DNA of 64,000 nucleotides, taken from assembly GCF_006345805.1 (NCBI RefSeq), contig NC_043015.1, positions 9,486,001 to 9,550,000 of the forward strand, given 5' to 3'. This document shows positions 1,969-50,360 of this stretch, one piece after another. The notes beneath the pieces were generated by a model. The model was given only the letters and a program-made list of their open reading frames with translations, did not search any database and had not been told where the DNA came from. Positions within the stretch are counted from its first letter, which is position 1. Each line of letters opens with the position of its first letter. The stretch comes from Octopus sinensis. Taxonomy: Eukaryota. The translations under genes and the position numbers were made by a program.

Positions 1969-2319
1969 AAGTTAATTCAGTTATATGCAAACATATATGA
2001 ATATTCCTATATACGAAAATCTTTGCTTTTTTTCAGTAAGATTTTTGGCAAACTGGAATCAGCTCTAGCTGAATTTTCAGAATGAGAAATTTGGAAATTA
2101 TAGGGATCGCCTATCTGGTTTTCAATAGACCACGATATATCCGTGAACTCTTTAAAAGTGTGTTTCCCCACTTATTTTCTTCCCACATCCACTATACGTC
2201 GTACAGAAAAATTATACCGCAACGACGTATATTCTTAATATTTCATTACAATTACCTAATTCAAAATTAATCAAGCGATAACTCTTTCATTGAAAATGTA
2301 CATTATCGACTAAGAAAAA

Positions 2320-5988: not shown

Positions 5989-6059
5989 AAGAGGAGAGAA
6001 GAAGAAAAAAAAGAAGAAGAAGAAGAAGGAGAAGAAGGAGAAAAAGATGAAGAATAAAA

Positions 6060-6185
6060 GAAGAGATCCCCAAGAAAAAGCGCCTTCTAATTGATGTAGC
6101 TGTACCAATAGATGACAATGTTTATCTAAAAGTAAAGTAGAAACATTCAAAATACAAATATCTGGAAATAGAGGCAAATGGAAAG
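6060..6185 (+). mobile_element. R4/Dong-like LINE fragment, REL endonuclease region
   Basis: Translation KRLLIDVAVPIDDNVYLKVK*KHSKYKYLEIE parallels LIDVSV...KLSKYNDL of the element at ~9100. Confidence 0.7.
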
Positions 6186-8003
6186 CGGAGCCCAGAAACA
6201 GAGTAGTAAATCTCAACTTGGAAGCGGAAGAAAGAATAGAGACGGAAAAGAGGAGAATGTAGACCTACCCCAAGTAGAGAAAGTAGACTTACCTGCATAG
6301 CGATGACACAAAATCGGAGGGGAATAATAAAGAGATCATAGAAGAATAATAAAATATCATGAGAGAAGTCATCAAGACTAAGATTACCGACATAGTCAAT
6401 AGAGACGCGTTACCAAAGCTCTCGTACAGTATAAAAAAATAACAACATAATCACGATATATAATATTGCTTAGACAGATCTTAAGAAATAAGGGAAATGA
6501 TCTAACAATCTTAATTAGCCTCATCTATTCTACTGCTAAAGTTGTAACTACTGAATTCGACGACAGAGAGGAGGAGCAACAATGTCAATAGACCTCCTAA
6601 GTGGAAAGTAACAATACAAAAAATTGTTCGAATTTTTGCGGCCGGATGTATCAGTTCTCGATAAAATTGCTAGAGGGGTAAATGCTAAAACGAAACTAGC
6701 TATAAATATCAAACGAAAATATAAAATAATTTATAAACCTCCCTGCAACCAAGGAAATAGTGAAACAACGAATAAAACTCAAAGCCCAACGGCTCAGAAG
6801 CTATGGCAAAAGAATAAAATTTTATCTACAAAAGAAGGTATTCACGACAGATGCAAAAACCTTTTACAGGGAAACTGGCAAATGCAAGATAGAAGTAAAT
6901 GAGCTAATATAAGGCTGAGGAAATGGAAGAGTTCTGGAAGAAAATATAGAACACCAAAAAAGAATATGATGCTGGAAGCTCATTGGAGTGAACGTGAGAA
7001 ATTGAGACGGAGTGCAGTTGAAGAGCCGAAGTGGGAGTAAATAGGAGAAGAAGAGCAAAAGAGTGTTCTTAGAAAGTCACACAGATGGAGAACCTCAGGA
7101 CTGGTGCGGTTCCCTAACTTCTGGCTGAATTGCTTGACAAAAGTACACCGAAATGTTGCTGCATCCCTAACTGATGTCATCAAGAACCCAGAGGAAATAC
7201 CTACCTGGTTGACCGAAGGAACTTACCTTTTATAAGACTGAAGACAGGAAAAATCAAAAGAACTACCAACGAATTCCATGTCTTAAAACCACCTACAAGA
7301 TCATCACATCCATACTTTCCCAGAACAGAATTCTGTCCATCCACAAGCTCAGAAAGGTTGTAAAAGGAATGAATTCTTAAGGATGCAAAGATCAGTTATT
7401 CATAAATAAAATGATTATAGGGAATTGCTTGAACAACAAGAAGAACCTAAGTTTGACATGGATAGACTACAGGAAGTCGTTTAAAAATGTCCCACATAAT
7501 TAGCTACACAAAGCCCTTGAGATATATATGACCTCTGTAATTTCCAAATTATTACAAGCTAATATAGTCCAGTGGATTTCCCTTCTAAACCATAGTAATA
7601 GTATCGGCCAAACTAACATCAACATCTAACGAGGTATCTTTCAAGGTAACTCCCTCTCCCCAATATTCTTTTACGTGGTACCGATCCCGCACTCAAACGA
7701 GCTGATTAACATTAGGTTCGGGTTCAAAATGTATGACATTACAGTAACTCATCTGTTTTAAATGGACGATCTGAAGCTGTTTGCTAGAAATGACGTAGAG
7801 CTTGTAGAGCTGTAAACAACTGTTAAAGAGTTTCAATAACATCGGGATGGATTCCCGCCTTGATAAGAGTGCTAAAGCAAATATTGTAAGAAGAAAAGCT
7901 TAAGCAAACAGCTTCCATTAAATTAGATACCGACACTACCATCAAGGAGCGTGACCTACAAGGTAGCTATAAATACTAGGGAATAATCGAAGGAAACATT
8001 ATA

Positions 8004-8199
8004 AACAAATATATAACAAAAACACAAGGACTAACATGTATACATAACATACAGAAAATAGCACCACTAGGCACCGCACTCATTCTACTGAAAACATTTT
8101 GGATGCATTAAAAATAATACCATCACAACAAACCGCAGAACATACCCAAGGCATACAGAGCTGCGACCGGTAGTGCAGGGAAAGCTCGTTATAAAAATA
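8004..8199 (+). repeat. 196-bp insertion of an R4-like 3' end inside the RT; copy of 9337-9531
   Basis: Direct alignment to 9337-9531; removing it restores GNII-QHATMKEKIRKEHYRRIQSILKTE. Confidence 0.88.
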
Positions 8200-9238
8200 C
8201 AACATGCTACCATGAAGGAAAAATACGAAAGGAGCATTACAGAAGAATACAATCCATACTAAAAACTGAAATAAGCTCCAAAAACTGCATCGAAGCCATT
8301 AATATACTGGCACTTCCAGTAGTCCAATACAGTTTTAATATCATTAACTAGACTCTTACAGAAATTTAACGCCTGGACAAGACGACAAGTACACTACTAA
8401 CATCAAAGAACATGCAGCACCCAAAAGCATACGTTGATCGTCTGCACCTACCTAGAAGCATGGGGGAAGACCAAGGATACAGGTAGAACTGTGCATAAGA
8501 CCTCCATAATAGCAACTAACATGTACTTATCTAATACAGAAAATTGAATACTGCATTTGATGAATAACCTGAAACCAGATCCACTGAAAAGGCAAAACGG
8601 ATGAAATAGACTGCAAAAAGAACGGGCAGAAAAATATTGAGGAGAGGTGGAGCCAGAAGCCGCTGACGATTTAGACCAAACAAAATCCCTCAGTGGCTAA
8701 GAAGCTCAGGACTGAAAGATGAGACTGACGGTTGCATATTAGTGGCCCAAGATCAAAGCCTGCTTACCAAAAAAAAAAACACTAGGCTATTGTTCTTAAA
8801 ATCGGTTCTGACTCTAAATGCAGATTCTACGACAAATTTGATGAAACGATAGACCATCTAGTCTCCGGATGTTCTGTGTTGACAGCAAACGAATACAAAA
8901 GTCGACACGGTAGGGTAGGACTGTATTTACATTGAAAAATATGTTAACACTACAAACTAAGCACTTCTGCTTACTGGTATGAACTTCATTCTAAGTCAGT
9001 CGTTGAAGGAAAAAGTACCACTATCCTCTACGAAAGATCCAAGCTAATCGACCAGACTTAGTCATTAAAGACAGAGCATGAAATTCTTGTAGATTAATTG
9101 ATGTAAGTGTTGCCAATGGTAAAACTATATCGGTAAAGGAATTTGACAAATTAAGTAAATATAATGATCTGAAAACTGAAAAAGAAGGAATGTGGAATCT
9201 TAAAGCGAGATTTGTTCCTCTTATTGTGGGCGCCCTTG

Positions 9239-9562
9239 TTAACAGAAATGTTTCTTTAAACGAAACGGAAAAACTTTCTAAAATGAGAAACGATTCCTGT
9301 CAAAGTAGATGCATTAGGTATGATAAAAATATTAAGACAAATACATAACAAAAACACAAGGACTAACATGTATACATAACATACAGAAAATAGCACCTCT
9401 AGGCACCGCACACATTCTACTGAAAATATTTTAGATGCCTTAAAAATAATACCATCACAACAAACCACAGAACATACCCAAGGCACATAGAGCTGCGTCC
9501 AGTAGTGCAGGGAAAGCTCGATATAAAAATAGGAGTACTGAATAATAATAATAATAATAATA

Positions 9563-9602
<40 letters not shown>

Positions 9603-9618
9603 GACGACGACGACGACG

Positions 9619-9709
<91 letters not shown>

Positions 9710-9724
9710 TTACTAGAAACACCT
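9239..9724 (+). mobile_element. 5'-truncated R4-like 3' end with (AAT)n(ACG)n(AAC)n(AAT)n tail, nested in the host R4 element
   Basis: IPVKVDALGMIK...NIQKIAPLGTAHIL, then 3' UTR and tail 9541-9705; host frame VGAL resumes as MIKKGTEN at 9728. Confidence 0.8.
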
Positions 9725-9885
9725 GAAATGATAAAAAAAGGAACTGAAAATTATTTAAGAATGATCCGTGGCTTACCCTCCATACAGTTAGTACAAAAGA
9801 TTGCCTTAACTGGTATTGAGAAGAGTATTGTCGCTGTGATTTTTTCCCGTTTTCCTATTTATTTTCTTTGTTTACTTTTTAAGAC

Positions 9886-10270
9886 CAAAAATATGTTGAC
9901 AGTATACGGAGCATTCTACCCGAAGAGTGACATTGATAGGCTGTACTTGTCTAAAAAAAAGGGCGGCAGAAGTTTAATCAGTCGCCAGGACTGTATCGAA
10001 GCAGAGGGAAAAAACCTAGGTTGTTATATAGAAAATGCTGTGGAACCACTGTTCAAATACACGGAGAAGTCCGGCGTCATGAACACTGAAAGTTATGCAA
10101 CTAAAGAAAAATTTAACCTACAAATAAACAACAACAAAAAAAAAAAGAAAAATGCATGGAAGGAGAAAAAATGTACGATCAGTTTGCAAGAGATATGAAT
10201 GCCAAGACAGATATAGAAGACCGGTGGCTACGGATATGAAGATATATGAAGATAGAGACTGGAGATATAT
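9886..10270 (+). mobile_element. R4-like LINE fragment (post-RT region), a different family
   Basis: MLTVYGAFYPKSDIDRLYLSKKKGGRSLIS...KKNAWKEKK. Confidence 0.85.
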
Positions 10271-12064
10271 ACTACTACGATATATTCTTGTAGTTATCGT
10301 TGTCACGGTCCACAAGTATAGATAACTACGTGTGATAAGATTTGATTTTCTTAGACGCTGTGTATTTAGAAATCTATAATGCAATGTTGCGTTCCATTAG
10401 TTGTAAATATTTAAGATCATTTTTCTTTGACATGTCACAACCTGGCACCGATCGAGCATACGCGATTATAATTATCTAAGTTATGAGTATGGCACTTTTT
10501 TTTTCTTAGAATAATGTATCTCGAAATTTATAGGATAGAAGTTGAATTAGCGGCGGAGTGTCTGTACCGTTGTTTCTGATGTACCGATTCAATATTTGGT
10601 CTGAAATGTTGCAGGATATCATTTGCGGTTTATAGGCTACAAAGTCTAGTAGAGTGATCATATAATCAGTGATTTCTCACAGATTTCGCCGACAAATCAA
10701 TTAGGAAGAGCAACAAAGTAACGTTTGTTATTGTGAGCAGGAACAATCAACAGTAAATTATAGTTTCTCTGTATCACTGCAATACCCATTGAAATTCGTG
10801 ATTAAGCAGACAATATTTGTTCGAGCATTGTTAATATGTATTAATATAATTGTTGTTGATATTGCAGACATACATCCTATTATGGAATTAACAATAATTA
10901 TACAAAAGATAACATCGCATTCAACAAGCAATTACGTTGAAAGTCTTTCAGATGTTACACAGACTAGCATATTGGAAAGCCTTTTCTATTGATCTACAGC
11001 CGATTAGATCGATTGAAATTCTCAAACGTCTGACACAGCACATGTTATCCAAGTATCTGACGTCCATATCATCCATATCAATCAGATTATTCACCGTCTT
11101 TTAGCTGAGTTGACGCAAAAATTCTTTAATCTTTTATCAATGAATCTGAAAATTTGATATTCATTTATCGATTCAGGATTCCATCGTATTAATTAAGGTT
11201 AAGATCGAATTCGTTTGGTTCAAATGTTACTTTCCTTTCACGCTGATATACGGAATGCACTACTCAATGTCTTATATTATAATTGGAACTAGTATTATAA
11301 GTAAGTATCTAACAATGCCATAAGGCGCAGTTTTAATCCCTAAAAATTAGTGTAATTAGCCCACTTGGTTTCAAAGTGTTTTTACGTTATCATTGGTTAA
11401 TCACCAAATCAATCACAAACAAAAACGTAATTGAAAATAACAATAGTGACAGGGCATGCATTATTAGTTCTTATATACACAACTACATGGTACAATATCA
11501 CATGTTAAGAGACAAAAATCAGTCTTTATGAAGTACTTGTGTGCTGTTCTTTGAATATCAGATAATCGGTTAGGTTTAATTTCATTAACTTGGCAGTCTC
11601 AATATTAATGGCTTGTTATTAAGATGGCATTTCATACAATCCTCGTGCTATAATCCCTTCTCGAAAACTATATCGTTATTCGATTAAATTATATCTCAGT
11701 AATGATATATATATACGCTTATATCCGTGCATACACAAAATCCTTCGAACTGTATTTATTTACGGTACCGTGCTTTTTGATATCAATATAGGTCAAATAT
11801 GCGTTTGAAATTCAAGTGATTGATTAAAAAGTACTAATCAAATACCGAGATCGATTTATATCGCTTTAAACTCTCGTAGAATGCATGCACATCAGGTAAT
11901 ATTAAAAACGACATAATCCATAATCATAAAAATATTCCGATGGTTAATCCTAGATGTGCAACAAACATTCCAACGCAAACACACAAATACACAAACACAT
12001 CTCCCTCTCTCTCTCTCACACACACAAACACACAAACACACACACACACATACACACACATATA

Positions 12065-12111
<47 letters not shown>

Positions 12112-12399
12112 ATGTATATATAGTGTGTGTGTGTGTGTGTGAATGCATATATGCATATATATGTGCATGTATGTATCTCACTCTCTTTTCCTCCCTGTAT
12201 ATATATACTGAAATCTCGAAATTGAACTGACATCCTTCATGTTACTGGTTCTTTTCGCGGACACTACACGTTGCTACAAATTTGTTGATATATTAATTTA
12301 CATTTCAGATCAGAGTATATTAATTGTGTACGGCAACTTGCTGTGCCGAGAACGCCATAAGTACAAGAATTAAGTGTTTGACAGAGGCGTATCCTATAT

Positions 12400-13049
12400 C
12401 AATCCGAGAATAGAGTAACCACTTAAAACGGCTCAAAACCCTGGGATAGCTCTTCCCTCAAATAACAGCGATTGAACAATTTAACGGGAAAAGGAGAGGA
12501 ATCAACATCATCTAAGTGAGACCAAGGAGGGTCTTCTGATAGACAAATATTTGGAAATAATCCCCGTTGTAATTTTCTTGATGCTGCTGTGCGACTCCGA
12601 ATCAGATGAGGTTCTACTAGTGCTGCTGCTACAGGAATTACAACCGTGTTTCGTGGTCTGCTACCACAAGAGCTCCTTTATAGGATCTAGTTAGCTCCAG
12701 ACATCATCAGGAGGAATCACTTCCGGTTTCGGACCTACTCCTCAACCGCTTTGACGTAGCACCACCACCCCTTTCGGAGGTGTCTTCAGCTCGGGTGTTT
12801 GGTGTATGTCTTCTTCTGTTCCCTAGCCTCTTCGATGTATCGTCAGTGAGTGTCAACCGGCGACTGACTGACTTGTCAATTTTTTCCCATTAAATACCTG
12901 CCCTCAGACTCCAGCAGGCAGCCCCAGCAAGTTGTCACGTGACACTGTCTCATCTCAACTGACTAGTAAAGGCGCCTAGTTTTAGTTTGCGCATTCTCTA
13001 AACGACCGTCACCTGTCAGTCAGCGAAGCTGATTCAGTGTCAGCTTGTC
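12400..13049 (-). other. GC-richer non-coding stretch directly 3' of the Hero-like ORF end; possible long 3' UTR or separate repeat
   Basis: Composition shift; local hairpins such as cacctcc-GAAA-ggggtg; no recognisable ORF. Confidence 0.3.
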
Positions 13050-19936: not shown

Positions 19937-20154
19937 AGTATTACTTAAATTTTCCTCGAATGAGGCTTTTACATGCCCATGACTACTTGTTGTAATTGAT
20001 AATTATTCCAAATTAATTAATTTCACCCTTCATTGTTACTCATATATATATATATATATAATATATATATTATATATGTGTGTGTGTGTGTGTGTGTATA
20101 CGTGTATGGGAGCGTGTGTGTGTGGTGTGTGTCTATGGATGGATGTATATATAT

Positions 20155-21300
20155 ATGGCCTACCTGGAATCACATATCTATGAAAAATCCAAATATAAGT
20201 ACGGCCAGTCTTTCTACAAATACCTGTTGGAGAACTGGAAACGCTACTTAGATGATTGCCTCATCCTATGGTCCCACACACTCGACCAACTTATAGACTT
20301 CAAAAACCTTATCAACAGTGTAAATAACAACATTCAATTCACAATGGAATGTAGTCAGGACCAACTCCCTTTTCTTGACATTCTAATCATTAAAAAAGGC
20401 GTCAACATTGAAACTAACATCCATTACAAACCCACTGACTCTAAACAATACCTTCTATTCACCTCCAATCACCCAAAACACACAAAGACAAATATCCCCT
20501 TCAACCTAGCGAGAAGAATCTGCACAATTGTCTCAAATGACGCAACACGAAATAGAAGACTCCGGGAACTAAGGGCAATTCTTCTTGAAAGACATTACCC
20601 GGCATCACTAGTAGACAACGGAATAGAACGGGCCAAATCAATCAGCACTCAAGACCTACGAAAACCTAAACACATCCACCGTACAGTAAATAGCCTCCCC
20701 TATCTCTCAACACACAACCCAAGGAATGCAGAAGCTTACACTATTATATACAACAACATTCCACAACTAAATCAAGACCCACGCCTGAAAAAATTACTGG
20801 CAGCTCATAAAATAATAAAAATTAAGAGACAACCTAAATCCCTAAAAAACCTCCTCACCAACGCAAAATTACACAACACAAACCCACCGCCCACCATCAA
20901 AATATGTGGTCGCCCCAACTGCAGGACTTGCATCCACCTCATTGAGGGATCGACGTACCAGTTCCGCTCGGGACACACATTCATCATAAAAAATAATTTC
21001 ACGTGCGCATCAACAAATGTACTCTACGTCATAAGGTGTGAAGGATGCCGCGAAGACTACATAGGGCAAACGAGCCTTACCTTCAGAGAAAGAATGACAG
21101 TTCGCCGACAACAACTGAGGGACCCCTCCACAAGACAGATACCACTAAGTGGACACTTAGACCATTGTGCACACAATAAGTCCCCCAAATTCTTAGTCTT
21201 CCCACTATACCAATGCTCGGACAACACCACAGACCAAACACGAATAAATAGGGAAAGTAATCTTATTCAAAAATACAGACCACAACTAAACATACTCTAA
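20155..21300 (+). CDS. Penelope-like element (Neptune-type) ORF: RT C-terminal half + Cys linker + GIY-YIG endonuclease; 5'-truncated
   Basis: Open 381 codons: WKRYLDDC, LPFLDI, YKPTD, HPKHTKTNIPFNLARRI, CGRPNCRTC, VLYVIRC...YIGQT, RESNLI...LN; the upstream part of ORF 20080 is microsatellite. Confidence 0.93.
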   Translation: MAYLESHIYEKSKYKYGQSFYKYLLENWKRYLDDCLILWSHTLDQLIDFKNLINSVNNNIQFTMECSQDQLPFLDILIIKKGVNIETNIHYKPTDSKQYLLFTSNHPKHTKTNIPFNLARRICTIVSNDATRNRRLRELRAILLERHYPASLVDNGIERAKSISTQDLRKPKHIHRTVNSLPYLSTHNPRNAEAYTIIYNNIPQLNQDPRLKKLLAAHKIIKIKRQPKSLKNLLTNAKLHNTNPPPTIKICGRPNCRTCIHLIEGSTYQFRSGHTFIIKNNFTCASTNVLYVIRCEGCREDYIGQTSLTFRERMTVRRQQLRDPSTRQIPLSGHLDHCAHNKSPKFLVFPLYQCSDNTTDQTRINRESNLIQKYRPQLNIL

Positions 21301-21419
21301 CATACCCCCTAGGCACACATCCAGAGCAAGCACACAGGGACACGCGCACACTCGCGACATATCATGCAGGCGGACACATGCACGCATCGGTACACATAGG
21401 GCACACTAGCGGGCATTGA

Positions 21420-23352: not shown

Positions 23353-23468
23353 ATATAAAAAAAATTAGAATTCATAATATTCTATGCTACTTTTGACAAT
23401 CTTTCTCCAAAGAGTGAAACCGGTTAAGTAAATAAACATCTTTTAAATTGCATTTTCAAACTTCTTTC

Positions 23469-23503
<35 letters not shown>

Positions 23504-23699
23504 GTGCGTGTGAATGCGGTTATGTATATATATATATATATATATATACAAATATGAGAGAGAATCCACTATGTCGAGGCCCTTACGCCAAAGAGAGATC
23601 CGTATGTGTCTCAACGTGAAAATGATAAGCCGAACTACTCGTACTTTTGACCACGTGTTAATATCCGGCGTGCAGTTCGACAAATTATATTTTATGACG

Positions 23700-23778
23700 A
23701 ACTTCACTGATGATCTGCAGATCAATTGTCTAAGTAAAATTGCATAAGTTATTAACAGTGAAACAATTGTATGGGGTT
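23700..23778 (+). ncRNA. Type I hammerhead ribozyme, family A copy 1
   Basis: aacttca-CTGATGA-[46 nt, ctg...cag]-GAAA-caatt-GTA|tggggtt; 7-bp stem I with two G.U pairs; ACAATTGT palindrome; U.U at base of stem II. Confidence 0.75.
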
Positions 23779-24222
23779 AATCTATATTTTTGTTATTTTT
23801 CGTTTGTCCTGCTCGCTTACTTTCATAGTGTGATATTTTTTTCTTGAGAACAATTCTTCGTGGTTGAGACTCATGCGGATCTCTCTATAGCGTAAGGGCG
23901 TCCACATAGTGGATTCTCTCTCATATTGTGTATTAATAATATTTACTGAATCTCAGATTCTATGCGCTAAACCACTGGTGTTAATTGATGTTATTAAATT
24001 AATATCCATTTTTCACCCTCATTTTGATTTTAATTCTAAATTAATATTTTCTCAAACCAGCGTAACTACTGCAGTGAATTATTATGAAGTATTTATTTCT
24101 GGATTTGGCGCGGTAGAACGAGGGCATTTGAATATTACTGTGAATATAATAGGCCGAACTACTCCTATTTTTATATCGTGTTAATATCTGGCGTGCAGTT
24201 CGACAAATTATATTTTAAGAAG

Positions 24223-24301
24223 AACCTCACTGATGATCTGCAGATTAATTGTCTAAGTAAAATTGCATAATTTATTAACAGTGAAACAATTGTATGGTGT
24301 T
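24223..24301 (+). ncRNA. Type I hammerhead ribozyme, family A copy 2
   Basis: aacctca-CTGATGA...GAAA-caatt-GTA|tggtgtt; one stem I mismatch. Confidence 0.7.
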
Positions 24302-24752
24302 AATCTATATTTTTGTTATTTTTCATTTGTCCTACTCGCTTACGTTCATACTGTGATAATTTTTTCTAGAGAACAATTCTTAGTGGTTGAGACTCATGCG
24401 GATCTCTCTATAGCGTAAGGGCGTCAACATAGTGGATTCTCTCTCATATTTGTGTATTAATAATATTTACTGAATCTCAGATTTCTATGCGCTAAACCAC
24501 TGGTGTTAAATTGATGTTATTAAATTAATATCCAATTTTTCACCCTCATTTTGATTTTAATTCTAAATTAATATTTTCTCAAACCAGCGTAAACTACTGC
24601 AGTGAATTATTTATGAAGTATTTATTTCTGGATTTGGCGCGGTAGAACGAGGGCATTTGAATATTACTGTGAATATAATAGGCCGAACTACTCCTATTTT
24701 TTATATCGTGTTAATATCTGGCGTGCAGTTCGACAAATTATATTTTAAGACG

Positions 24753-24831
24753 AACCTCACTGATGATCTGCAGATTAATTGTCTAAGTAAAATTGCATAA
24801 TTTATTAACAGTGAAACAATTGTATGGTGTT
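24753..24831 (+). ncRNA. Type I hammerhead ribozyme, family A copy 3
   Basis: Same motif as copy 2. Confidence 0.7.
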
Positions 24832-25082
24832 AATCTATATTTTTGTTATTTTTCATTTGTCCTACTCGCTTACGTTCATACTGTGATAATTTTTTCTAGA
24901 GAACAATTCTTAGTGGTTGAGACTCATGCGGATCTCTCTATAGCGTAAGGGCGTCAACATAGTGGAATCTCCCTCATATTTGTGTATTAATAATATTTAC
25001 TGAATCTCAGTTTTTATGCGCTAAACCACTGGTGTTAAATTGATGTTATTAAATTAATATCCAATATTTTCACCCTCATTTT

Positions 25083-25130
<48 letters not shown>

Positions 25131-25149
25131 ATATATATTATATATATAT

Positions 25150-25233
25150 GGAGATAGATAGATTAGATAGATAGATGATAGATAATAGATAGATAGATAG
25201 ATATATAAATATAGATAGATAGATAGATAGAGA

Positions 25234-25287
<54 letters not shown>

Positions 25288-25320
25288 GATAGATAGATAG
25301 ACAGACAGATAGATGGATTG
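25150..25320. repeat. (GATA)n microsatellite
   Basis: Directly visible. Confidence 0.95.
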
Positions 25321-25526
25321 ATAGGCGTTATAATTCTAACGGCTATTTCTGGCGGTGTCCAGGGCCATAATGCTAGAAATAGTTTGCAGCGATATGTAGA
25401 AAAACGCGACCAATCATAACAATAGCGCGTAAACTGATTCATTCGTTCGTTCAAGAATAATTGATCTTAAATTTGTCTCACTTAACGAAATCTTTCAATA
25501 CTACTATTAATAAAAGTGCAGGCATC

Positions 25527-25570
<44 letters not shown>

Positions 25571-25636
25571 ATATAAAGTATGATATATATCATATATATA
25601 TATATAATTATATATATAGATATATATATATATACA

Positions 25637-26205
25637 TGTGCGTATCATTTAGGTTGACGAGGGAAGGATGACCTCCCCTTGCAAATACCGATAGGGCACA
25701 GAAAGTGCGCCAATAGCCAGCAGGCGAAGATGTTCTGCTGGGGCTACAAGCTACAATAACATCCACCCATAGTGATTAGCCATATTTAGATGGCAAACAT
25801 ACTTCACGTTGTTGTGCAGTTAATGTCCATACCTCGTTCAGAGATTTATTATTGCTTGTATACACTTTTTAAAGATCAGTGACGAAACGTCACTGGAAAA
25901 AGGATAGATGTATTTGCATTGGGACCCTTCCATCGAAAACCGTCGATTGCCGTGCGCTGATGACGGGTCAATACCCAGAAACTGTAGTCCGTGCGTATCA
26001 CTTAGGTTGACGAGGGAAGAAACTTCCCTTTGCAAATACCGATAGGGCACATAAAGTTTGTCAATAGCCAGCTGGCGAAGATGTTCTCCTGGTGCTACAA
26101 GCTACAGCAACATCCACCCTTAGAGATTAGCAATATTTAGATGGGAAATATACTTCCGATTGTCGTGCAGTTACTGTCTATACCTCGTTCAGAGATTTAT
26201 ATTGT
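25637..26205 (+). mobile_element. HHR repeat family B: 1.6 x 353-nt unit starting at the predicted cleavage site (retrozyme-like)
   Basis: 25637-25855 aligns to 25990-26205 (roughly 80-85% by eye); (TA)n on both flanks. Confidence 0.75.
25951..25995 (+). ncRNA. Minimal type I hammerhead ribozyme, family B
   Basis: cgtgcg-CTGATGA-c-gggt(caat)accc-a-GAAA-ctgta-GTC|cgtgcg; 6-bp stem I; C.A at base of stem II. Confidence 0.8.
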
Positions 26206-26226
26206 ATATATATATATACATATTTA

Positions 26227-26267
<41 letters not shown>

Positions 26268-26494
26268 ATATATATATATATATATATAGATATATATATA
26301 TATAATATTATATATATATATATATATAAACAAATCAAATTGCGATAAAATAAAAATAATATAATCGCTGGTATTACTAACACAAGCCATATATTTTTCA
26401 TATATCAGTACATTAAGGCGAATATGTGCTAGGAATACAGAAGCTTGATAAATTAAGTGAAATGATGATTAAAAACATTTACTAAACGCGTAAT

Positions 26495-26566
26495 TCTCAG
26501 ACTGCAGTTTCTTTCTTTTCAGCAATAAAGATAATTAATTTGCTCAGGGAGAATTCTTCAGTGAGA
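26495..26566 (-). ncRNA. Type I hammerhead ribozyme, family C (canonical core)
   Basis: Minus: tctca-CTGAAGA-attct..agcaa..ttgct..agaaa-GAAA-ctgca-GTC|tgaga; perfect 5-bp stem I; ACTGCAGT palindrome. Confidence 0.8.
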
Positions 26567-26889
26567 CCCTGTCTTTCTGGGATCCTAACTCACTAGAAGC
26601 ATGTGCTTCTAATGATTTACTCTCCCTAACTAATCATATCACTGCGCAGACTCCGAACGTCCCGACAAAACTAGGGAATTCTGGTATATCGCATGGCGCT
26701 CGTAATTTATCGAGAAATATGTAAACAAATCAAATTGCGATAAAATAAAAATAATTATAATCGCTGTATTACTAACACAAGACCATATATTTTTCATATA
26801 TCAGTACATTAAGGCGAATATGTGCTAGGAATACAGAAGCTTGATAAATAAGTGAAATGAAGATAAAAAACATTTACTAAACCGGTAAT

Positions 26890-26961
26890 TCTCAGACTGC
26901 AGTTTTTTTTCTTTTCAGCAATAAAGATAATTTATTTGCTCAGGGAGAATCTTCAGTGAGA
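26890..26961 (-). ncRNA. Type I hammerhead ribozyme, family C second copy (G12 lost or read error)
   Basis: tctca-CTGAAGA-ttct...agaaaaaaaa-ctgca-GTC|tgaga. Confidence 0.6.
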
Positions 26962-27354
26962 CCCTGTCTTTCTGGGATCCTAACTCACTAGAAGCATGTG
27001 CTCTAATGATTTACTCTCCCTAACTAATCATATCACTGCGCAGACTCCGAACGTCCCGACAAAACTAGGGAATTCTGGTATATCGCCTGGCGCTCGTAAT
27101 TTATCGAGAAATATGTAAACAAATCAATTGCGATAAAATAAAAATAATTATAATCGCTGGTATTACTAACACAAGCCATATGTTTTTCATATATCAGTAC
27201 ATTAAGGCGAAATATGTGCTAGGAATACAGAAGCTAGATAATATATAATATATATATATATATATATAAGATATATATTATATATATATATATATACATA
27301 TATAATATATATATATATACATGCTATACATATACATACAACATACATGCATAC

Positions 27355-27389
<35 letters not shown>

Positions 27390-27486
27390 TGATAAAACGG
27401 TAAGATAACAAAAAAGAAAGAGACCTCAATATTATGTAAATAGAGGGAATTTATCTATACAATATGTTACATTACTCGGTAGTCAA

Positions 27487-27547
27487 GATAAAACTCTGAG
27501 TTTCAGATGCCGAAGTGGAAATCCACAACACCATCTCATCGGTTATC
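27487..27547 (-). ncRNA. Hammerhead-like motif in the inverted pLTR
   Basis: gataa-CCGATGA-gatg...catc-t-GAAA-ctcaga-GTT|ttatc. Confidence 0.45.
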
Positions 27548-28908
27548 TGGCTATTTGAATACGTTATGAAAAATATACCCGTTAAAAATGAAGGGAAATT
27601 ACTCTGTTATAACTCTGCTTTGCCTGCGTACTTATACATCGCTCGTATTTTTCGTCATAAAAATTATATAAAAATACATAAAAATATATAAAAATATATA
27701 AAAATATATAAAATCTTCTTGGGACATAACACAGAAAGCATTTCTATCCGTTTTCTTTAGGGGACCAAAAACGTAACAGAAAATTTAGTCACATGTGGCA
27801 TGATCCGAAAAGCTCTGTCCTTGTATTTAGACATGTGGTAGGGTCTAAGCTGCTTTTCCAGATAAGCCATCTCTCCATTCAAAATTTATTTAAAAATATT
27901 AGTAAGAGGATTTCTAGCCTCTCATCTAATGAGGACATCTTCAATAGCGTGCCCCAGTTTATAATAAAGCTTTAAAAGATAGTGGTTTTAGCGAAAAAAT
28001 AAAATATACACTATCACCAGCCCAACAATAAGGAAAAGGAATAATAGAAATAGGAAGGTCATCTGTTTACGCCCCCTTACTCACCCGAGGTGGCCTTCAA
28101 TATAGGTAAATATTTCCTAGCACTGATAGATAGACATTTTCCAGTTAACCATGCTTATAGAAACTCTTCAATAGACACAATTTAAAAATTAGTTTTAGTT
28201 CAACTACCAATTTTAAAAACATAATCATCATAACATCAAAAAACACAAGAAGAAAACAGCTGTTCATGCAGGAATAAAGAATTGTGCCCGCTAAATGGAG
28301 CTTGCATGTCCAAGACCATCATATATGAAGCTACCGTAACTCTATAACCACTAAAGACACCGTTTCGACGAAGAAATACGTGGGCCTGACAGAGGGTATT
28401 AAGGCCAGGTTCAATAACCACACTTTGAGCTTTAGGCACTGGAACAAAACGACACAATTATCCAATCATATTTGGTCTTTAAAGAGATAAAGGTGGTCGA
28501 TTATAACATACAATGGAGATTTTGGCCAGATGTAAGCCATATACTAACGGCAGCGGAAGGTGCGGTTTATGCGACATGGAGAGATGGCTTATCTAGAAAA
28601 CAAGCTTAGACCCTACCACATGTCTAAATACAAGGACAGAGCTTTTCGGATCATGCCCACATGTGACTAAATTTTCTGTTACGTTTTTGGTCCCCTAAAG
28701 AAACGGATAGAACATGCTTTCTGTGTTATGTCCCAAGAAGATTTTATATATTTTTATATATTTTTATATATTTTTATGTGTTTTTATATAATATATTTTA
28801 TGACGAAAAATGCGAGCGATGTATAGTACGCAGGCAAAGCAGAGTTATAACAGAGTAATTTCCCTTCATTTTTAACGGTATATTTTTTCATAACGTTTTC
28901 AAATAGCA

Positions 28909-28972
28909 GATAACCGATGAGATGGTGTTGTGGATTTCCACTCCTTCGGCATCTGAAACTCAGAGTTTTATC
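28909..28972 (+). ncRNA. Hammerhead-like motif in the 3' pLTR (U4>C core variant)
   Basis: gataa-CCGATGA-gatg...catc-t-GAAA-ctcaga-GTT|ttatc; 5-bp stem I. Confidence 0.5.
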
Positions 28973-28995
28973 TTGACTACCGAGTAATGTAACAT

Positions 28996-29070
<75 letters not shown>

Positions 29071-36729: not shown

Positions 36730-37790
36730 TGAATTAGTACAAGGAAAAACAGCGCAATTTTAGCTTTAAGTTTAGTGTTGGAGATATAAGGGATCTCTTC
36801 GTGGAAACTATAGATCTGGCGAGCCTGGTTATAATATGGGGCGTAATTGATAAAGGCGTCATTAGTTGATAAGTTGATTTTGATAGATATACCAGTCAAT
36901 ATGTTACTAAGGGAACATACAGGGTGATTGTATAGGATGTTGATATATTCTAACGACTGACTGGATTTATGTAAAGGGTAATATAGATTCACATCTAAGT
37001 CGTGGGTGATTCTACGTAATTAGCAAATGTGACGTTAGTTTGAAAAGACACATTCAGGTTAAAATTTCTTTTTAATCTAAAAAGGGATTTACTGGCTCGT
37101 TTGACAGCAGATCGAAATAAAGTACTGCCTATAAGTAGTGCATCATCCCTGTACTGGAATTTGAAGAGGTTGCGGAAATCTTGATTAGTTTGGGTCAGAA
37201 GGAATAGGCCGACCACTTCAGTAACCTGGCGGGAGTCGGATGAGCGAATGAGTTTTATTAAACAAATCCTTACACAGGTTGCAGCCCCAATAATTATCCT
37301 TGAAGTAAATTAGCGATTTCATAGCAGCTAGAATGATGTCGATGTCTGATCGGGAGTAATGTACATACATTCTCGCGAAGATTAGGGCCATATTTAACAT
37401 GATAGGTGATATGGGAACACAATAATTAGGAATAAAAAAGATAAGGAAATGCGTAGTTTATTAGGATGGGAGTGGAACCAAGTGAAAACGTCACCAGTAC
37501 AATTTAGAAGTGTAGCTAAATCTTTACTCCAACTAATAGGCTAATTCAACTCATGTCTGATTTAGTAGGGCAGATCAGTCTAATAAAAGATTTAGTTTAG
37601 ATGTCGGGTATATAGTCTTTCAGGATGAAGTGAGCCGGGTTAGGTACGTTTGGTTTACTTCTCTCTCCTGGTCTAAGATCCTAGATATGCTTACAATGGC
37701 GGTTCTTAATGACATTCAGAGCACTGCTTTGGGATATATGATAATCCCCCTCCTCACAGATTGTCGGACCTTGTGCCTATCACTCGAAAT
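36730..37790 (-). mobile_element. PLE (Naiad-like) reverse transcriptase, degenerate
   Basis: AHFILKDY...RLICPTKSD, DIILAAMKSLIYF, VGLFLL, QYRDDAL, YYPLHK...YINILYNHP. Confidence 0.75.
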
Positions 37791-37847: not shown

Positions 37848-38390
37848 AGTCGGCGAGCTGGCAGAAACGTTAGCACACCGGGCGAAATGCTTAGCGATAT
37901 TTCCTCTACTGTTACTTTCTGAGTTCAAGTTCCGCCGAGGTCGACTCTGCCTTTCATCCTTTTGGGGTTGATAAATTAAGTACCATTTACGCACTTGGTC
38001 GATATAATCGACTTAATCCCTTTGTCTGTCCTTGTTTGTCCCCTCTGTGTTTAGCCCCTTGTGGGTAATGAAGAAATAGGTATTTCGTCTGTCTTTAAGT
38101 TCTGAGTTCGATATTCCACCGAGGTCGAGTTTGCCTTTCATCCTTTTGGGATCGATTAAATAAGTATCAGTTACGCACTGGGGTCCATATAATCGACTTA
38201 ATCCGTTTGTCCTCTCTGTGTTTAGCCCCTTGTTGGTAGTTCTGAGTTCGATATTCCACCGAGGTCGACTTTGCTTTTCATCATTTTAGGGTCGATAAAT
38301 TATGTAACAGTTGCGTACATAATCCACTGGCTCCCACCCCTAAAATGTTGGGTTTTGTGCCTAGAATAGAAAAGAATATTTGTATTAAGT
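37848..38390 (+). mobile_element. Full tRNA-derived SINE followed head-to-tail by two partial copies
   Basis: ggcgagctggcagaaacgttagc... head; ttctgagttc...ccgaggtcga body three times. Confidence 0.85.
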
Positions 38391-38991: not shown

Positions 38992-39222
38992 ACCTATTTC
39001 TTTACTACCCAGAAGGGGCTAAACACAGAGGGGACAAACAAGGACAGACAAACGGATTAAGCCGCTTATATCGACCCCAGTGCGTAACTGGTACTTATTT
39101 AATCGACCCCAAAAGGATGAAAGGCAAAGTCGACCTCGGCGGAATTTGAACTCAGAACGTAACGGCAGACGAAATACGGCTACGCATTTCGCCCGGCATG
39201 CTAACGGTTCTGCTAGTTCGCC
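38992..39222 (-). mobile_element. Full-length SINE, same family as 37848
   Basis: Reverse complement aligns end to end with 37848-38088. Confidence 0.88.
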
Positions 39223-45563: not shown

Positions 45564-45765
45564 TATATTTAAGTAGGTGAATGAATTATCCTAGTATTGA
45601 TAATTCGGTTAATCGATACCTTGGTAGCAAATTCACGTCAGAAAACACGGTTGTAGCTGCATGCCAAGGGTAGAACCCCGTGTTCTTGTGTGGTAATTTG
45701 TGTATTTTCTAAAATGAATAAACGAAAGAATGGAGTTGAACGAAGATGTTAACAAAATTCCTTTA

Positions 45766-45848
45766 CTTTCAACACATGTTCCGAAGACTGCATATTCTTA
45801 ATTCCGAAGGAATAAAGGGTGCATTATGCCGTCTTCTCATCAGGAAAG
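45766..45848 (-). ncRNA. Hammerhead, left arm, GAAA>GGAA
   Basis: ctttc-CTGATGA-gaagac...gtcttc-GGAA-catgt-GTT|gaaag. Confidence 0.6.
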
Positions 45849-45983
45849 ACAAGGAACTTCTAGGAAAGACAAGGAACCTCTATCAGCCTCAAGTTTGTTT
45901 GATCTGCATTATCACTGTGAACACCATGTTGGAAGCCATAAAAAAGTTTTTGTCCGTCTTGAGGCTGATATAGGTTCCTTGTC

Positions 45984-46063
45984 TTTCCTGATGAGAAGAC
46001 GGCATAATGCACCCTTTATTCCTTCGGAATAAGAATATGCAGTCTTCGAAACATGTGTTGAAA
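45984..46063 (+). ncRNA. Type I hammerhead ribozyme, right arm, canonical core
   Basis: tttc-CTGATGA-gaagac.gcata...tatgc.gtcttc-GAAA-catgt-GTT|gaaa; G-C closed 6-bp stem II. Confidence 0.8.
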
Positions 46064-46131
46064 ATAAAGGAATTTTGTTAAAAATCTTCGTTCGACTCCA
46101 TTCTTTCATTTATTCATTTAAAAAAAAAAAA

Positions 46132-49927: not shown

Positions 49928-50038
49928 TATAATAATAATAATAATAATAATGATGATGATAATAATAATAATAATATTAATAATAATAATATTAATAATA
50001 ATAATAATAATAATATTAATAATAATATAATAATAATA

Positions 50039-50106
<68 letters not shown>

Positions 50107-50130
50107 TTAATAATAATAATAATAATAATA
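49893..50130. repeat. (AAT)n microsatellite
   Basis: Directly visible; similar arrays at 43338-43410, 50880-50962 and 63942-64000. Confidence 0.95.
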
Positions 50131-50185
50131 CCGAACGCGAGGGAATGCAGCTTTCGAAACGAGCCTTTTAAAACTAGATTCAGCG

Positions 50186-50241
50186 GCAGATCAAATGATT
50201 TCATAATTAGTGTACAAAATGCACTTTTTAATCGTCAGTGC
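50186..50241 (-). ncRNA. Degenerate type I hammerhead motif
   Basis: gca-CTGACGA-ttaaaa-agtg(cattttgta)cact-aattat-GAAA-tcatttga-TC|tgc; only 3-bp stem I. Confidence 0.4.
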
Positions 50242-50360
50242 AAGCATAATCAAGACACACTAATATGAACGTACCAGGCGAACACCAAATTTATCCAGCA
50301 TAGTGTATAAATTATTCACACTTATATATCTATGTAAAATGCAGACTTTTCGATTTGCAT

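What the first reader, a model, noticed from the sequence alone, without database searches (positions are those of the whole stretch)
23551..27240. Cluster of three unrelated hammerhead-ribozyme tandem repeats (retrozyme-like) between two Penelope-like elements
Seen: three non-homologous non-coding units (~527, 353, ~394 nt) within 3.7 kb, each bounded by (TA)n, each with one type I HHR per unit, an NUH triplet (GUA, GUC, GUC) and a self-complementary stem III (ACAAUUGU, ACUGUAGU, ACUGCAGU). A Neptune-type PLE ORF lies ~2.3 kb to the left and a Naiad-like PLE with its own HHR-like motif lies directly to the right. Known: PLE pLTRs carry minimal type I HHRs with palindromic stem III, and metazoan non-LTR retrozymes are HHR tandem repeats that yield circular RNAs and are thought to use PLE machinery. 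Inference: a locus of several co-resident, PLE-mobilised circRNA parasites. I do not know of such families described from cephalopods, but I could not search.
Basis: partly seen in the sequence, partly recalled or inferred. Interest (0 to 1): 0.92.

Follow-up and report, generated by a model that had tools for sequence, protein, structure and literature searches.

The report
Hammerhead-ribozyme repeat arrays in octopod (TA)n
Three unrelated short non-coding repeats, each carrying a minimal hammerhead self-cleaving RNA motif, sit side by side in a TA-microsatellite of an octopus-like genome and look like small parasites copied in by Penelope-like retrotransposons: a known kind of element, apparently not yet described in cephalopods.

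Summary
Window 23551-27241 has three mutually unrelated, non-coding head-to-tail arrays, each flanked by (TA)n: A (about 527 nt, 2.8 units, + strand), B (353 nt, 1.6 units, +) and C (394 nt, 2.3 units, - strand). Each carries a type I hammerhead (HHR) with CUGANGA and GAAA boxes, a self-complementary helix III, and GUA, GUC and GUC cleavage triplets.

A strict motif scan finds 6 such motifs in the window and none in 300 shuffles.

Corrections:
- B has a single HHR.
- C's second HHR is dead (G12 to A).
- All three have a 1x1 mismatch at the base of helix II.
- Rfam gives only sub-threshold Hammerhead_1 hits (C), none for A or B.
- The PLE remnant on the right is not Naiad-like. It is a 5'-truncated PLE with a C-terminal endonuclease and Hydra-clade features.

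Array A starts with an inverted 5'-truncated fragment. The coding PLE remnant next door, and a coding PLE in Argonauta, show the same signature: (TA)n target, head-to-head copies, and a tail at one end.

Best reading: independent insertions of non-autonomous, HHR-bearing PLE derivatives (animal non-LTR retrozymes) into a (TA)n hotspot.

Self-cleavage, circular RNA and genome-wide copy number remain untested. This is a new member of a known kind, of moderate interest.

The parts
20155..21336 (+). 5'-truncated Penelope-like element. It covers the C-terminal part of the RT, a CX4CxxC linker (CGRPNCRTC) and a GIY-YIG endonuclease with a CxxC inside the core. This is Neptune/Nematis-type. No HHR at its 3' end.
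   Evidence: homologues carry RVT_1 plus GIY-YIG. RVT_1 at 174-330 and GIY-YIG at 563-656 of 659 aa; tblastn to residues 274-659; 84% nt identity to O. bimaculoides L001 10604-11785.
23470..23548 (.). (TA)n tracts flanking array A on the left
23551..23611 (-). Inverted, 5'-truncated fragment of unit A. It is the reverse complement of unit part 23863-23927 and is joined head-to-head to the direct array.
   Evidence: 88-91% to 23927-23863, 24450-24386 and 24980-24916 in reverse. The forward form occurs only here.
23612..25088 (+). Array A: 2.8 head-to-tail units of 523-530 nt, GC 0.31-0.32, non-coding
23707..23771 (+). HHR A1 (C3 to H17): CUGAUGA, long helix II, GAAA, helix III ACAAUUGU, GUA. 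Predicted cut after 23771.
24230..24294 (+). HHR A2, core intact. Predicted cut after 24294.
24760..24824 (+). HHR A3, core intact. Predicted cut after 24824.
25090..25324 (.). (TA)n followed by (GATA)n between array A and a 208-nt unique spacer (25325-25532)
25533..25634 (.). (TA)n flanking array B on the left
25636..26212 (+). Array B: 1.6 units of 351-353 nt, GC 0.45, copies 87% identical. Its 5' end lies 1-2 nt after the predicted HHR cut site.
25957..25989 (+). HHR B, the only one in the array: CUGAUGA, C, GGGU-CAAU-ACCC, A, GAAA, helix III ACUGUAGU, GUC. Helix I CGUGCG/CGUGCG (6 bp).
26205..26328 (.). (TA)n between arrays B and C
26326..27241 (-). Array C: 2.3 units of 394-395 nt, GC 0.34, 96% identical. 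The HHR is on the minus strand.
26500..26561 (-). HHR C1, intact: CUGAAGA, long helix II, GAAA, helix III ACUGCAGU, GUC. Predicted cut between 26500 and 26499.
   Evidence: Rfam Hammerhead_1, 21.2 bits, E=0.0028 on a 96-nt stretch, below the gathering score of 34.
26895..26956 (-). HHR C2, dead copy: G12 to A (AAAAC for GAAAC) and a 1-nt deletion after the first box
27248..27389 (.). (TA)n and related microsatellite between array C and the right-hand PLE remnant
27390..27456 (.). 67-nt stretch between the (TA)n and the 3' end of the inverted PLE copy. It is absent at the other end of the pair, like a PLE 'tail'.
   Evidence: The tail is described in PMC8557442 and PMC11167929. Assigning this stretch as a tail is an inference.
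27457..27875 (-). Inverted 5'-truncated copy of the right-hand PLE: 3' UTR plus the end of the endonuclease
27876..28999 (+). Direct 5'-truncated, frameshifted copy of a PLE with a C-terminal endonuclease. It has the RT end, a CxCX5C linker (CSCRNKELC), and a GIY-YIG (IIYEATV...KKYVGLTEG) with no cysteine pair. These are Hydra-clade features. It ends in (TA)n at 29000-29068.
   Evidence: Clade features are from PMC8557442, section 11.
28908..28975 (+). HHR-like motif near the 3' end of that PLE: CCGAUGA (U4 to C), GAUG...CAUC, an extra U, GAAAC, helix III ACUCAGAGU, helix I 6 bp. The same motif is in the inverted copy at about 27549-27485.

Best explanation
A long (TA)n microsatellite has been hit repeatedly by retrotransposition of the Penelope-like (PLE) type. 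Three of the insertions are short, non-coding elements from three unrelated families. Each carries a minimal type I hammerhead ribozyme of the kind found in PLE terminal repeats. Each was copied in at more than unit length, as 1.6 to 2.9 head-to-tail units. These are non-autonomous PLE derivatives, the elements called non-LTR retrozymes in animals.

Shown:
- the arrays, their boundaries and the complete HHR cores;
- different helix I and helix II sequences that still pair in every family;
- a self-complementary helix III;
- the (TA)n flanks and the inverted 5'-truncated fragment at the head of array A;
- the same insertion signature in a coding PLE remnant next door and in a coding PLE of Argonauta.

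Inferred mechanism:
1. A PLE protein supplied in trans nicks both strands of AT-rich (TA)n DNA. A clade that targets (TA)n, such as Hydra, Neptune or Naiad, is the likely source.
2. It primes reverse transcription on the HHR-bearing RNA. A second cDNA from the other strand gives the inverted partner.
3. The template is a multimeric or circular RNA, which gives more-than-unit copies.
4. In transcripts of an array, two hammerheads pair through the palindromic helix III and cut after GUA or GUC, releasing monomers that can be ligated into circles.

At this locus only array A (three intact sites, monomers of 523 and 530 nt) could still do this. B and C are dead-end copies.
For: HHR motifs:
- 6 in the window against 0 in 300 shuffles.
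- Seven independent families or elements share identical cores. Helix I (3-7 bp) and helix II (3-6 bp) pair with different sequences, and helix III is palindromic in all.
- Rfam Hammerhead_1 aligns C1 and the 46-kb motif in the expected register, although below threshold.

Non-coding and independent of PLE ORFs:
- Only short ORFs are present, and one tested ORF has no relatives.
- Full PLE proteins hit only 20131-21309, outside the arrays, by tblastn.

(TA)n association:
- (TA)n tracts of 6 or more repeats cover 3.5% of the window, yet all six array ends abut one.

PLE signature:
- An inverted fragment sits at the 5' end of A.
- The right-hand PLE remnant is a head-to-head pair between (TA)n tracts with an extra 67 nt at one end only.
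- Argonauta L002 holds a coding PLE as a head-to-head pair (6091-8296 and 10451-12601). It has a min-HHR about 80 nt from each 3' end, (TA)n at both outer ends and a 37-nt tail on one side. Its HHR has the same U.U at the base of helix II as array A.

Literature:
- min-HHRs with palindromic 15.2-16.2 that act as dimers in PLE repeats (PMC4209133).
- Tandem HHR repeats as circRNA-forming retrozymes, including a U.U at the base of helix II in an axolotl ribozyme (PMC7229834).
- (TA)n targeting, inverted 5'-truncated copies and tails (PMC8557442).
- A PLE protein that cuts and extends both strands of AT-rich DNA and starts reverse transcription internally (PMC11167929).
- Retrozymes as PLE derivatives in vertebrates (bioRxiv 10.64898/2026.07.22.740005).

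Other:
- Circular monomers fold somewhat better than shuffles, z = -2.1 to -3.3.
Against: - No experiment or expression data: cleavage, circles and mobilisation are all inferred.
- Metazoan min-HHRs cleave poorly in vitro (PMC4209133).
- A, B and C lack a plain G10.1-C11.1 pair. For A, the minimum-energy fold pairs UCACUG with CAGUGA, which competes with the ribozyme fold.
- Rfam finds nothing at its curated threshold, and nothing at all for A or B.
- Within the locus the HHR spans are no better conserved than the rest of the unit. Three of ten copies in the window carry a core mutation.
- Copies within one array differ unequally (A1/A2 5.8%, A2/A3 2.1%, B 13%). This does not fit a single rolling-circle event followed by equal decay.
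- No sequence similarity links A, B or C to the 3' ends of the PLEs in the window, so no autonomous partner is identified.
- No other genomic copy was found in any collection I could search.
Confidence: 0.72

Rival explanations
1. The arrays are only decayed ends of ordinary coding PLEs: solo pseudo-LTRs or heavily 5'-truncated copies. They are not independent non-autonomous families, and the HHRs are the PLEs' own.
For: - Most min-HHRs in animal genomes are isolated motifs attributed to truncated PLEs (PMC4209133).
- PLE insertions are usually 5'-truncated and form partial tandems (PMC8557442).
- The two other HHR loci in the window (45.7-46.1 kb and 58.3-59.0 kb) are inverted pairs rather than tandem arrays.
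- The HHR architecture matches that of a coding octopod PLE.
Against: - The head-to-tail junctions join the unit's 3' part directly to its 5' part with no ORF between them. The repeating unit is therefore 353-530 nt, not a 2-4 kb PLE.
- No PLE coding remnant lies inside the arrays.
- The units show no similarity to the PLE 3' ends present in the window.
Confidence: 0.15
2. The arrays are local minisatellites that grew in place by unequal crossing-over or slippage near (TA)n. The hammerhead motifs are fossils with no present role, and no retrotransposition placed the arrays here.
For: - Divergence between neighbouring copies is unequal: A1/A2 5.8% against A2/A3 2.1%.
- The core is no better conserved than the flanks, and there are dead copies (C2).
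- The satellite-birth model is discussed for retrozymes in bioRxiv 10.64898/2026.07.22.740005.
Against: - Three unrelated families, each with a full HHR, lie side by side and each is cleanly bounded by (TA)n.
- Array A has an inverted 5'-truncated partner, which unequal crossing-over does not produce.
- The same signature is seen in coding PLEs.
- Local amplification after insertion is compatible with the main explanation and may account for part of the copy number.
Confidence: 0.08
3. The hammerhead resemblance is a chance match in AT-rich repeats, or the units are DNA transposons (MITEs) with terminal inverted repeats. There is no ribozyme.
For: - Rfam gives no hit at gathering score.
- The 10.1/11.1 positions are non-canonical.
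- The first A unit is bracketed by a 61-65 nt inverted repeat.
Against: - 0 of 300 shuffles give even one such motif, against 6 observed in four families.
- Helices covary across families.
- The inverted repeat exists only at the array's 5' edge, not around each unit.
Confidence: 0.03

Closest known systems
Animal non-LTR retrozymes (Cervera and de la Pena 2020, PMC7229834; Li, Clavereau and Pollet 2026, bioRxiv 10.64898/2026.07.22.740005)
   Same: - Short, AT-rich, non-coding head-to-tail repeats of a few hundred nt with one type I HHR per unit.
- A weak or palindromic helix III, which implies action as a dimer.
- Proposed dependence on PLE machinery.
- A U.U at the base of helix II is known from the axolotl HHR_Amex2.
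   Different: - The arrays here are very short (1.6-2.9 units).
- Unit A (527 nt) is above the usual 150-450 nt.
- The ribozymes are the minimal PLE type without recognisable loop 1-loop 2 contacts, and two have very long helix II inserts.
- No expression or circularity data exist here.
- The (TA)n flanks and inverted partner are not part of the published description (the word 'microsatellite' is absent from PMC7229834).
Minimal hammerheads of PLE pseudo-LTRs (Cervera and de la Pena 2014, PMC4209133)
   Same: - CUGANGA and GAAA boxes.
- An extra nucleotide after position 9.
- Palindromic 15.2-16.2 with no real hairpin, short helix I and long helix II.
- Pairs in opposite orientation 100-700 bp apart occur, as at the 46-kb and 58-kb loci in this window.
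   Different: - The motifs here are not in repeats flanking a PLE ORF.
- The G10.1-C11.1 pair reported as highly conserved is replaced or offset: C-G in A, U-A in C, and G-C in B only if a bulge is allowed. There is also an extra unpaired base before G12.
Hydra-clade and Neptune-clade Penelope-like elements (Craig et al. 2021, PMC8557442)
   Same: - (TA)n is their preferred target.
- Partial tandems, an inverted 5'-truncated copy at the upstream end and a tail at one end.
- HHR near the 3' end.
- Both types are present as remnants beside the arrays.
   Different: These are coding elements of 2-4 kb. The arrays have no ORF and share no detectable sequence with the two remnants in the window.
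Newt satellite 2, Schistosoma Sm-alpha and cave-cricket pDo500 hammerhead satellites
   Same: Tandem or SINE-like genomic repeats with type I HHRs. The newt ribozyme cleaves as a double hammerhead through an extended helix III (cited in PMC7229834).
   Different: Those families have thousands of copies and experimentally shown cleavage. Here copy number and activity are unknown.

Membership tests
Hammerhead ribozyme, type I | Conserved core: C3 U4 G5 A6 N7 G8 A9, G12 A13 A14, A15.1-U16.1, H17 not G | tested here: met
   The core is complete in A1-A3, B and C1. C2 has G12 to A.
Hammerhead ribozyme, type I | Three helices around the core, with helix I open and helices II and III closed | tested here: met
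   helix I is 5-7 bp (3 contiguous bp, then a mismatch, in A2/A3) and helix II is 3-4 bp next to the core. Helix III exists only as a self-complementary 8-mer, so it forms between two copies (dimer folds).
Hammerhead ribozyme, type I | Match to the curated Rfam model Hammerhead_1 (RF00163) at gathering score | tested here: not met
   no hit. On short stretches C1 scores 21.2 bits and the 46-kb motif 17 bits against a gathering score of 34. A and B score nothing.
Hammerhead ribozyme, type I | Self-cleavage at the predicted site | not testable with these tools
   Needs in vitro transcription of monomer and dimer constructs.
PLE minimal HHR (PMC4209133) | Palindromic 15.2-16.2 (and loop 3 where present) | tested here: met
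   ACAAUUGU, ACUGUAGU (with G-U pairs) and ACUGCAGU.
PLE minimal HHR (PMC4209133) | [quoted passage not shown] | tested here: inconclusive
   an extra base follows A9 in A, B and C, but it is mirrored by an extra base before G12. The next pair is C-G (A), G-C (B) or U-A (C). A coding Argonauta PLE shows the same U...U arrangement.
PLE minimal HHR (PMC4209133) | Located in the terminal repeats of a PLE with an RT/GIY-YIG ORF | tested here: not met
   there is no PLE coding sequence within 23551-27241.
Animal non-LTR retrozyme (PMC7229834) | Head-to-tail repeats of about 150-450 nt with one type I HHR per unit, from dimers to long multimers | tested here: met
   353 and 394 nt are within the range and 527 nt is slightly above it. 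There are 1.6, 2.3 and 2.8 units.
Animal non-LTR retrozyme (PMC7229834) | Low GC (<45%) and no coding capacity | tested here: met
   GC 0.31-0.34 for A and C, and 0.45 for B (borderline). ORFs are at most 91 aa; no relatives for the B ORF.
Animal non-LTR retrozyme (PMC7229834) | Canonical HHR with loop 1-loop 2 tertiary contacts | tested here: not met
   no defined loop 1, and helix II loops of 4 to about 40 nt. These are the minimal PLE type, which the 2020 paper lists separately.
Animal non-LTR retrozyme (PMC7229834) | Many dispersed genomic copies, expressed as linear and circular monomer RNAs | not testable with these tools
   No eukaryotic genome or transcriptome of the source species could be searched. 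Exact-ORF look-ups, a protein search and two metagenome scans found nothing.
Hydra-clade PLE (right-hand remnant; PMC8557442 section 11) | C-terminal GIY-YIG endonuclease after the RT | tested here: met
   window 27871-28674 aligns to residues 95-361 of P0190 (371 aa); homologue P0205 has a YRDD motif, and its residues 78-156 align to the post-RVT_1 part of a canonical PLE (E=0.005).
Hydra-clade PLE (right-hand remnant; PMC8557442 section 11) | [quoted passage not shown] | tested here: met
   CSCRNKELC; IIYEATVT...KKYVGLTEG without a Cys pair; CGLCDME; (TA)n at 27370-27389 and 29000-29057.
Hydra-clade PLE (right-hand remnant; PMC8557442 section 11) | Placement in the Hydra clade by RT phylogeny; DKT and RWK motifs | not tested
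   The RT core is missing from the truncated copy, and no reference Hydra sequences were at hand.
   RT-end-like sequence lies upstream of the endonuclease, nothing RT-like lies downstream of it, and the core has no cysteine pair.

The most novel reading that the evidence does not exclude
The locus may preserve footprints of how animal retrozymes are copied into DNA.
- Array B begins 1-2 nt after the predicted hammerhead cut. That would be a genomic trace of self-cleavage in vivo, with the reverse transcriptase running off a 5' end made by the ribozyme.
- The two cDNAs of array A, and those of the 46-kb pair, end at different places in the unit, each in an A/T-rich patch next to (TA)n. This is what internal priming on a circular or multimeric RNA without a fixed 3' end would give.

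If this held genome-wide, it would be direct structural evidence that HHR-processed RNAs are templates for PLE-type, two-strand, target-primed reverse transcription at (TA)n.
Probability: 0.2. Interest if true: 0.6.

Novelty: new member of a known kind. Interest (0 to 1): 0.4.

Why it matters
How animal hammerhead repeats (retrozymes) move is still argued mainly from co-occurrence and phylogeny, and in vertebrates.

In this locus, retrozyme-like arrays lie next to coding PLE remnants. Both carry the same insertion marks: a (TA)n target, a head-to-head partner and unequal 3' ends. That is structural support for mobilisation by PLEs, in an invertebrate group where such families seem not to have been described. 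In the paper library I searched, cephalopod hammerheads appear only as an automated count of Hammerhead_1 hits in the giant squid genome (PMC6962438).

It also shows that curated Rfam models miss this ribozyme type. Cephalopod genome annotations will therefore under-report it.

It does not change the known picture of what these elements are.

Tried and rejected
- Rfam on the whole window at gathering score, and on 23400-27400 at E up to 10. Only microRNA-like hits on (TA)n came up, which I rejected as low-complexity artefacts.
- Pfam on the left ORF gave nothing in this Pfam copy. Its identity rests on homologues instead.
- Other genomic copies of the units were sought in four ways, all empty:
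  - exact look-ups of two unit ORFs;
  - a protein search with the 87-aa frame that covers HHR B;
  - a metagenome scan with the HHR A pattern;
  - a metagenome scan with the HHR C pattern.
- A word-indexed protein search with the 53-aa endonuclease fragment found no candidates. The single 53-aa fragment then worked.
- O. bimaculoides and Argonauta loci around homologues of the left PLE hold no sequence related to units A, B or C.
- tRNA search: none, so the units are not tRNA-derived SINEs.
- The bacterial promoter and terminator scan is irrelevant for this eukaryotic sequence.
- MITE reading of the first A unit: rejected, because the inverted arm exists only at the array edge.
They show no difference, as expected for copies that decay neutrally after insertion.

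Full report
**1. What is in the sequence**

Window 23470-29068 is a chain of (TA)n tracts with other sequence inserted between them.

Three of the inserts are head-to-tail arrays:
- Array A has direct copies at 23616-24013, 24140-24534 and 24669-25063. Spacing is 523 and 530 nt, and identity is 93-98%.
- Array B is 25636-25992 against 25991-26212. Spacing is 351-353 nt and identity is 87%.
- Array C is 26322-27241, with period 394, 2.3 copies and 96% matches.

The three units match only themselves within the 64 kb. They hold no tRNA. Their ORFs are at most 91 aa. An 87-aa frame of B has no relative among 5.8 billion protein clusters. GC is 0.31-0.34 for A and C, and 0.45 for B.

**2. The hammerheads**

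I scanned both strands of the window for the two conserved boxes, an even-length self-complementary helix III running from A15.1 to U16.1, H17 not G, and at least 3 bp each in helices I and II. The scan finds six motifs:
- three in A (23707-23771, 24230-24294, 24760-24824);
- one in B (25957-25989);
- one in C on the minus strand (26561-26500);
- one outside the finding (45988-46059).

None of 300 dinucleotide-preserving shuffles of the window gave a single motif.

A looser scan adds a motif at 58831-58864.

Across these families, and in a coding PLE from Argonauta, the core is identical. Helix I and helix II pair with quite different sequences. This covariation across families is the best available evidence that the fold matters.

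In two-copy folding, helix III forms between the copies for C, the 46-kb motif and the 58-kb motif.

**3. Weak points of the ribozyme call**

- Rfam finds nothing at its curated threshold.
- On stretches of about 100 nt, Hammerhead_1 aligns C1 in the expected register at 21.2 bits and the 46-kb motif at 17 bits, against a gathering score of 34. A and B give nothing.
- All three motifs have a 1x1 mismatch between the core and helix II: U.U, C.A and A.A. The 2014 survey of PLE hammerheads reports an extra base after position 9 and then a conserved G10.1-C11.1 pair (PMC4209133). A U.U at the base of helix II is reported for an axolotl retrozyme ribozyme (PMC7229834).
- In A, the minimum-energy fold pairs UCACUG with CAGUGA, which competes with the ribozyme fold.
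- B has one hammerhead only.
- The second hammerhead of C reads AAAAC for GAAAC (G12 to A) and has lost a base after the first box.

Only A, with three intact sites, could release monomers from this locus. These would be 523 and 530 nt.

**4. The neighbours**

Left neighbour:
- The ORF at 20155-21297 matches residues 274-659 of 659-aa proteins. In these, RVT_1 lies at 174-330 and GIY-YIG at 563-656.
- It is 84% identical in DNA to an Octopus bimaculoides locus, with homology ending at 21336.
- It carries CGRPNCRTC (CX4CxxC) and a CxxC inside the GIY-YIG core. This is the Neptune/Nematis configuration (PMC8557442).
- It is 5'-truncated, and no hammerhead is seen at its 3' end.

Right neighbour (27457-28999):
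- It is a head-to-head pair. An inverted copy at 27457-27875 meets a direct copy at 27876-28999, and the pair lies between (TA)n tracts.
- The direct copy encodes, with frameshifts, the last 245 or so residues of a PLE ORF.
- Its relatives in a 1.84-billion-protein library are short. The longer ones carry RT-like sequence in front of the endonuclease. P0205 has a YRDD motif, and its residues 78-156 align to the part of a canonical PLE just after RVT_1.
- The linker is CSCRNKELC (CxCX5C). There is no cysteine pair between GIY and YIG. CGLCDME supplies a CxxC next to the conserved E.
- These are the published marks of the Hydra clade, whose families almost all insert into (TA)n (PMC8557442 section 11).
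It is still not supported.
It has C for U4 and an extra U before G12.
- The inverted copy is followed by 67 nt (27390-27456) that the direct copy lacks. This resembles the one-sided 'tail' of PLE insertions, but the assignment is an inference.

**5. Marks of PLE-type integration on the arrays**

- All six array ends abut (TA)n, although tracts of (TA)6 or longer cover only 3.5% of the window.
- Array A does not start with a unit. It starts with 61-65 nt that are the reverse complement of an internal part of the unit, joined head-to-head to the direct copies. The forward form of that stretch occurs nowhere else.
- Published work describes an inverted 5'-truncated copy at the upstream end of PLE insertions (PMC8557442). 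It also describes a PLE protein that cuts and extends both strands of AT-rich DNA and starts reverse transcription internally (PMC11167929).
- The two other hammerhead loci in the window are also head-to-head arrangements between (TA)n tracts. In each, the partner copy has a mutated core: A13 to G at the 46-kb locus and A9 to G at the 58-kb locus.

As a control from another octopod, I fetched the Argonauta hians locus that encodes a homologue of the left ORF.
- That PLE is a head-to-head pair (6091-8296 and 10451-12601, 96.7% identical).
- It has a minimal hammerhead about 80 nt from each 3' end (CUGAUGA-U-ACAAA...UUUGU-U-GAAACUAGUU).
- (TA)n lies at both outer ends, and a 37-nt tail lies on one side only.
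- Coding PLEs of octopods therefore show the same signature, and the same U...U arrangement beside helix II, as array A.

**6. Most likely mechanism**

Shown: the anatomy above.

Inferred:
1. Short HHR-bearing RNAs from three families were reverse-transcribed into nicks in (TA)n by a PLE protein supplied in trans.
2. Copying at more than unit length points to a multimeric or circular template.
3. In array transcripts, two hammerheads pair through helix III and cut, giving monomers that can be ligated to circles. This is the route proposed for PLEs and shown for retrozymes in other animals (PMC4209133, PMC7229834).

Two details fit this but are anecdotal:
- B begins 1-2 nt after the predicted cut. 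The chance of this for one end is about 1.4%, and roughly 7% over the five ends I looked at.
- The paired cDNAs of A, and of the 46-kb element, end at different A/T-rich places in the unit.

Against a single rolling-circle event, copies within arrays differ unequally: 5.8% against 2.1% in A, and 13% in B. Later local duplication or multi-unit templates must therefore be allowed.

The predicted circular monomers fold somewhat better than shuffles, with z = -2.1 to -3.3. This is weak support.

**7. Comparison with the known**

The arrays work like animal non-LTR retrozymes and meet their structural definition. There are three exceptions:
- The ribozymes are the minimal PLE type, not the canonical type with loop-loop contacts.
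- The arrays are very short.
- Expression is unknown.

They fail one defining feature of PLE terminal-repeat hammerheads, because no ORF is attached.

A 2026 preprint argues, for vertebrates, that retrozymes are non-autonomous PLE derivatives, and states that invertebrates were not examined (10.64898/2026.07.22.740005).

In the paper library, cephalopod hammerheads appear only as a count of 235 Hammerhead_1 hits in the giant squid genome (PMC6962438). Craig et al. mention cephalopods only for Naiad remnants.

**8. Verdict**

- This is a new member of a known kind, not a new kind.
- Its value is as a compact, readable example of retrozyme-like arrays that carry PLE insertion marks, in a group where they were not described. 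It is also a warning that standard Rfam annotation misses them.
- Cleavage, circles, copy number and the autonomous partner all remain to be tested.

Noticed in passing
window 45570-46130: Fourth hammerhead family, as a head-to-head inverted pair between (TA)n tracts. The + copy (45988-46059) has an intact core, a canonical G10.1-C11.1 pair, a 6-bp helix II and helix III ACAUGUGU. Rfam Hammerhead_1 gives 17 bits. The - copy (about 45843-45771) has A13 to G and extends about 135 nt further 3' than the + copy.
   Followed up: partly
window 58255-59020: Fifth hammerhead family, in a complex inverted arrangement between (TA)n tracts. The + motif (58831-58864) is intact, with a 7-bp helix I. The - motif (58555-58522) has A9 to G. 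A second inverted repeat (58243-58335 / 58579-58671) is interleaved with it.
   Followed up: partly
window 36759-37243 (-): Another PLE-like coding remnant. tblastn with P0205 residues 15-173 gives E=1e-8. It is the same family as the right-hand (Hydra-like) element. Inverted repeats lie nearby at 37852-38211 / 39047-39222.
   Followed up: no
window 2306-3001 (-): A 232-aa ORF with a Pfam RVT_1 match (E=2.6e-12). It is a reverse transcriptase of a different, non-PLE retroelement.
   Followed up: no
window 23388-23499 and 63630-63812; L001 8246-8447: An interspersed repeat that abuts the (TA)n left of array A. It recurs in the window and, at 84-89% identity, in Octopus bimaculoides. Its family is unknown.
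   Followed up: no
L002 (Argonauta hians BAAFZT010000013.1) 5994-12619: A coding PLE as a head-to-head pair with minimal hammerheads (12487-12519 + and 6205-6173 -). (TA)n lies at both outer ends, a 37-nt tail lies on one side, and the 3' UTR holds a tandem repeat of about 120 nt (11170-11960).
   Followed up: partly
window 25325-25532: A 208-nt unique stretch enclosed by (GATA)n and (TA)n between arrays A and B. It has no repeat, no hammerhead and no match elsewhere in the window. It could be original sequence or another insertion.
   Followed up: no
window 50189-50238 (-) and 49940-50963: A looser hammerhead-like hit (CUGACGA...GAAA, helix III AUCAUUUGAU, not palindromic) lies beside long inverted repeats (50046-50145 / 50864-50963 and 50371-50508 / 50659-50796). 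It is probably a different element.
   Followed up: no
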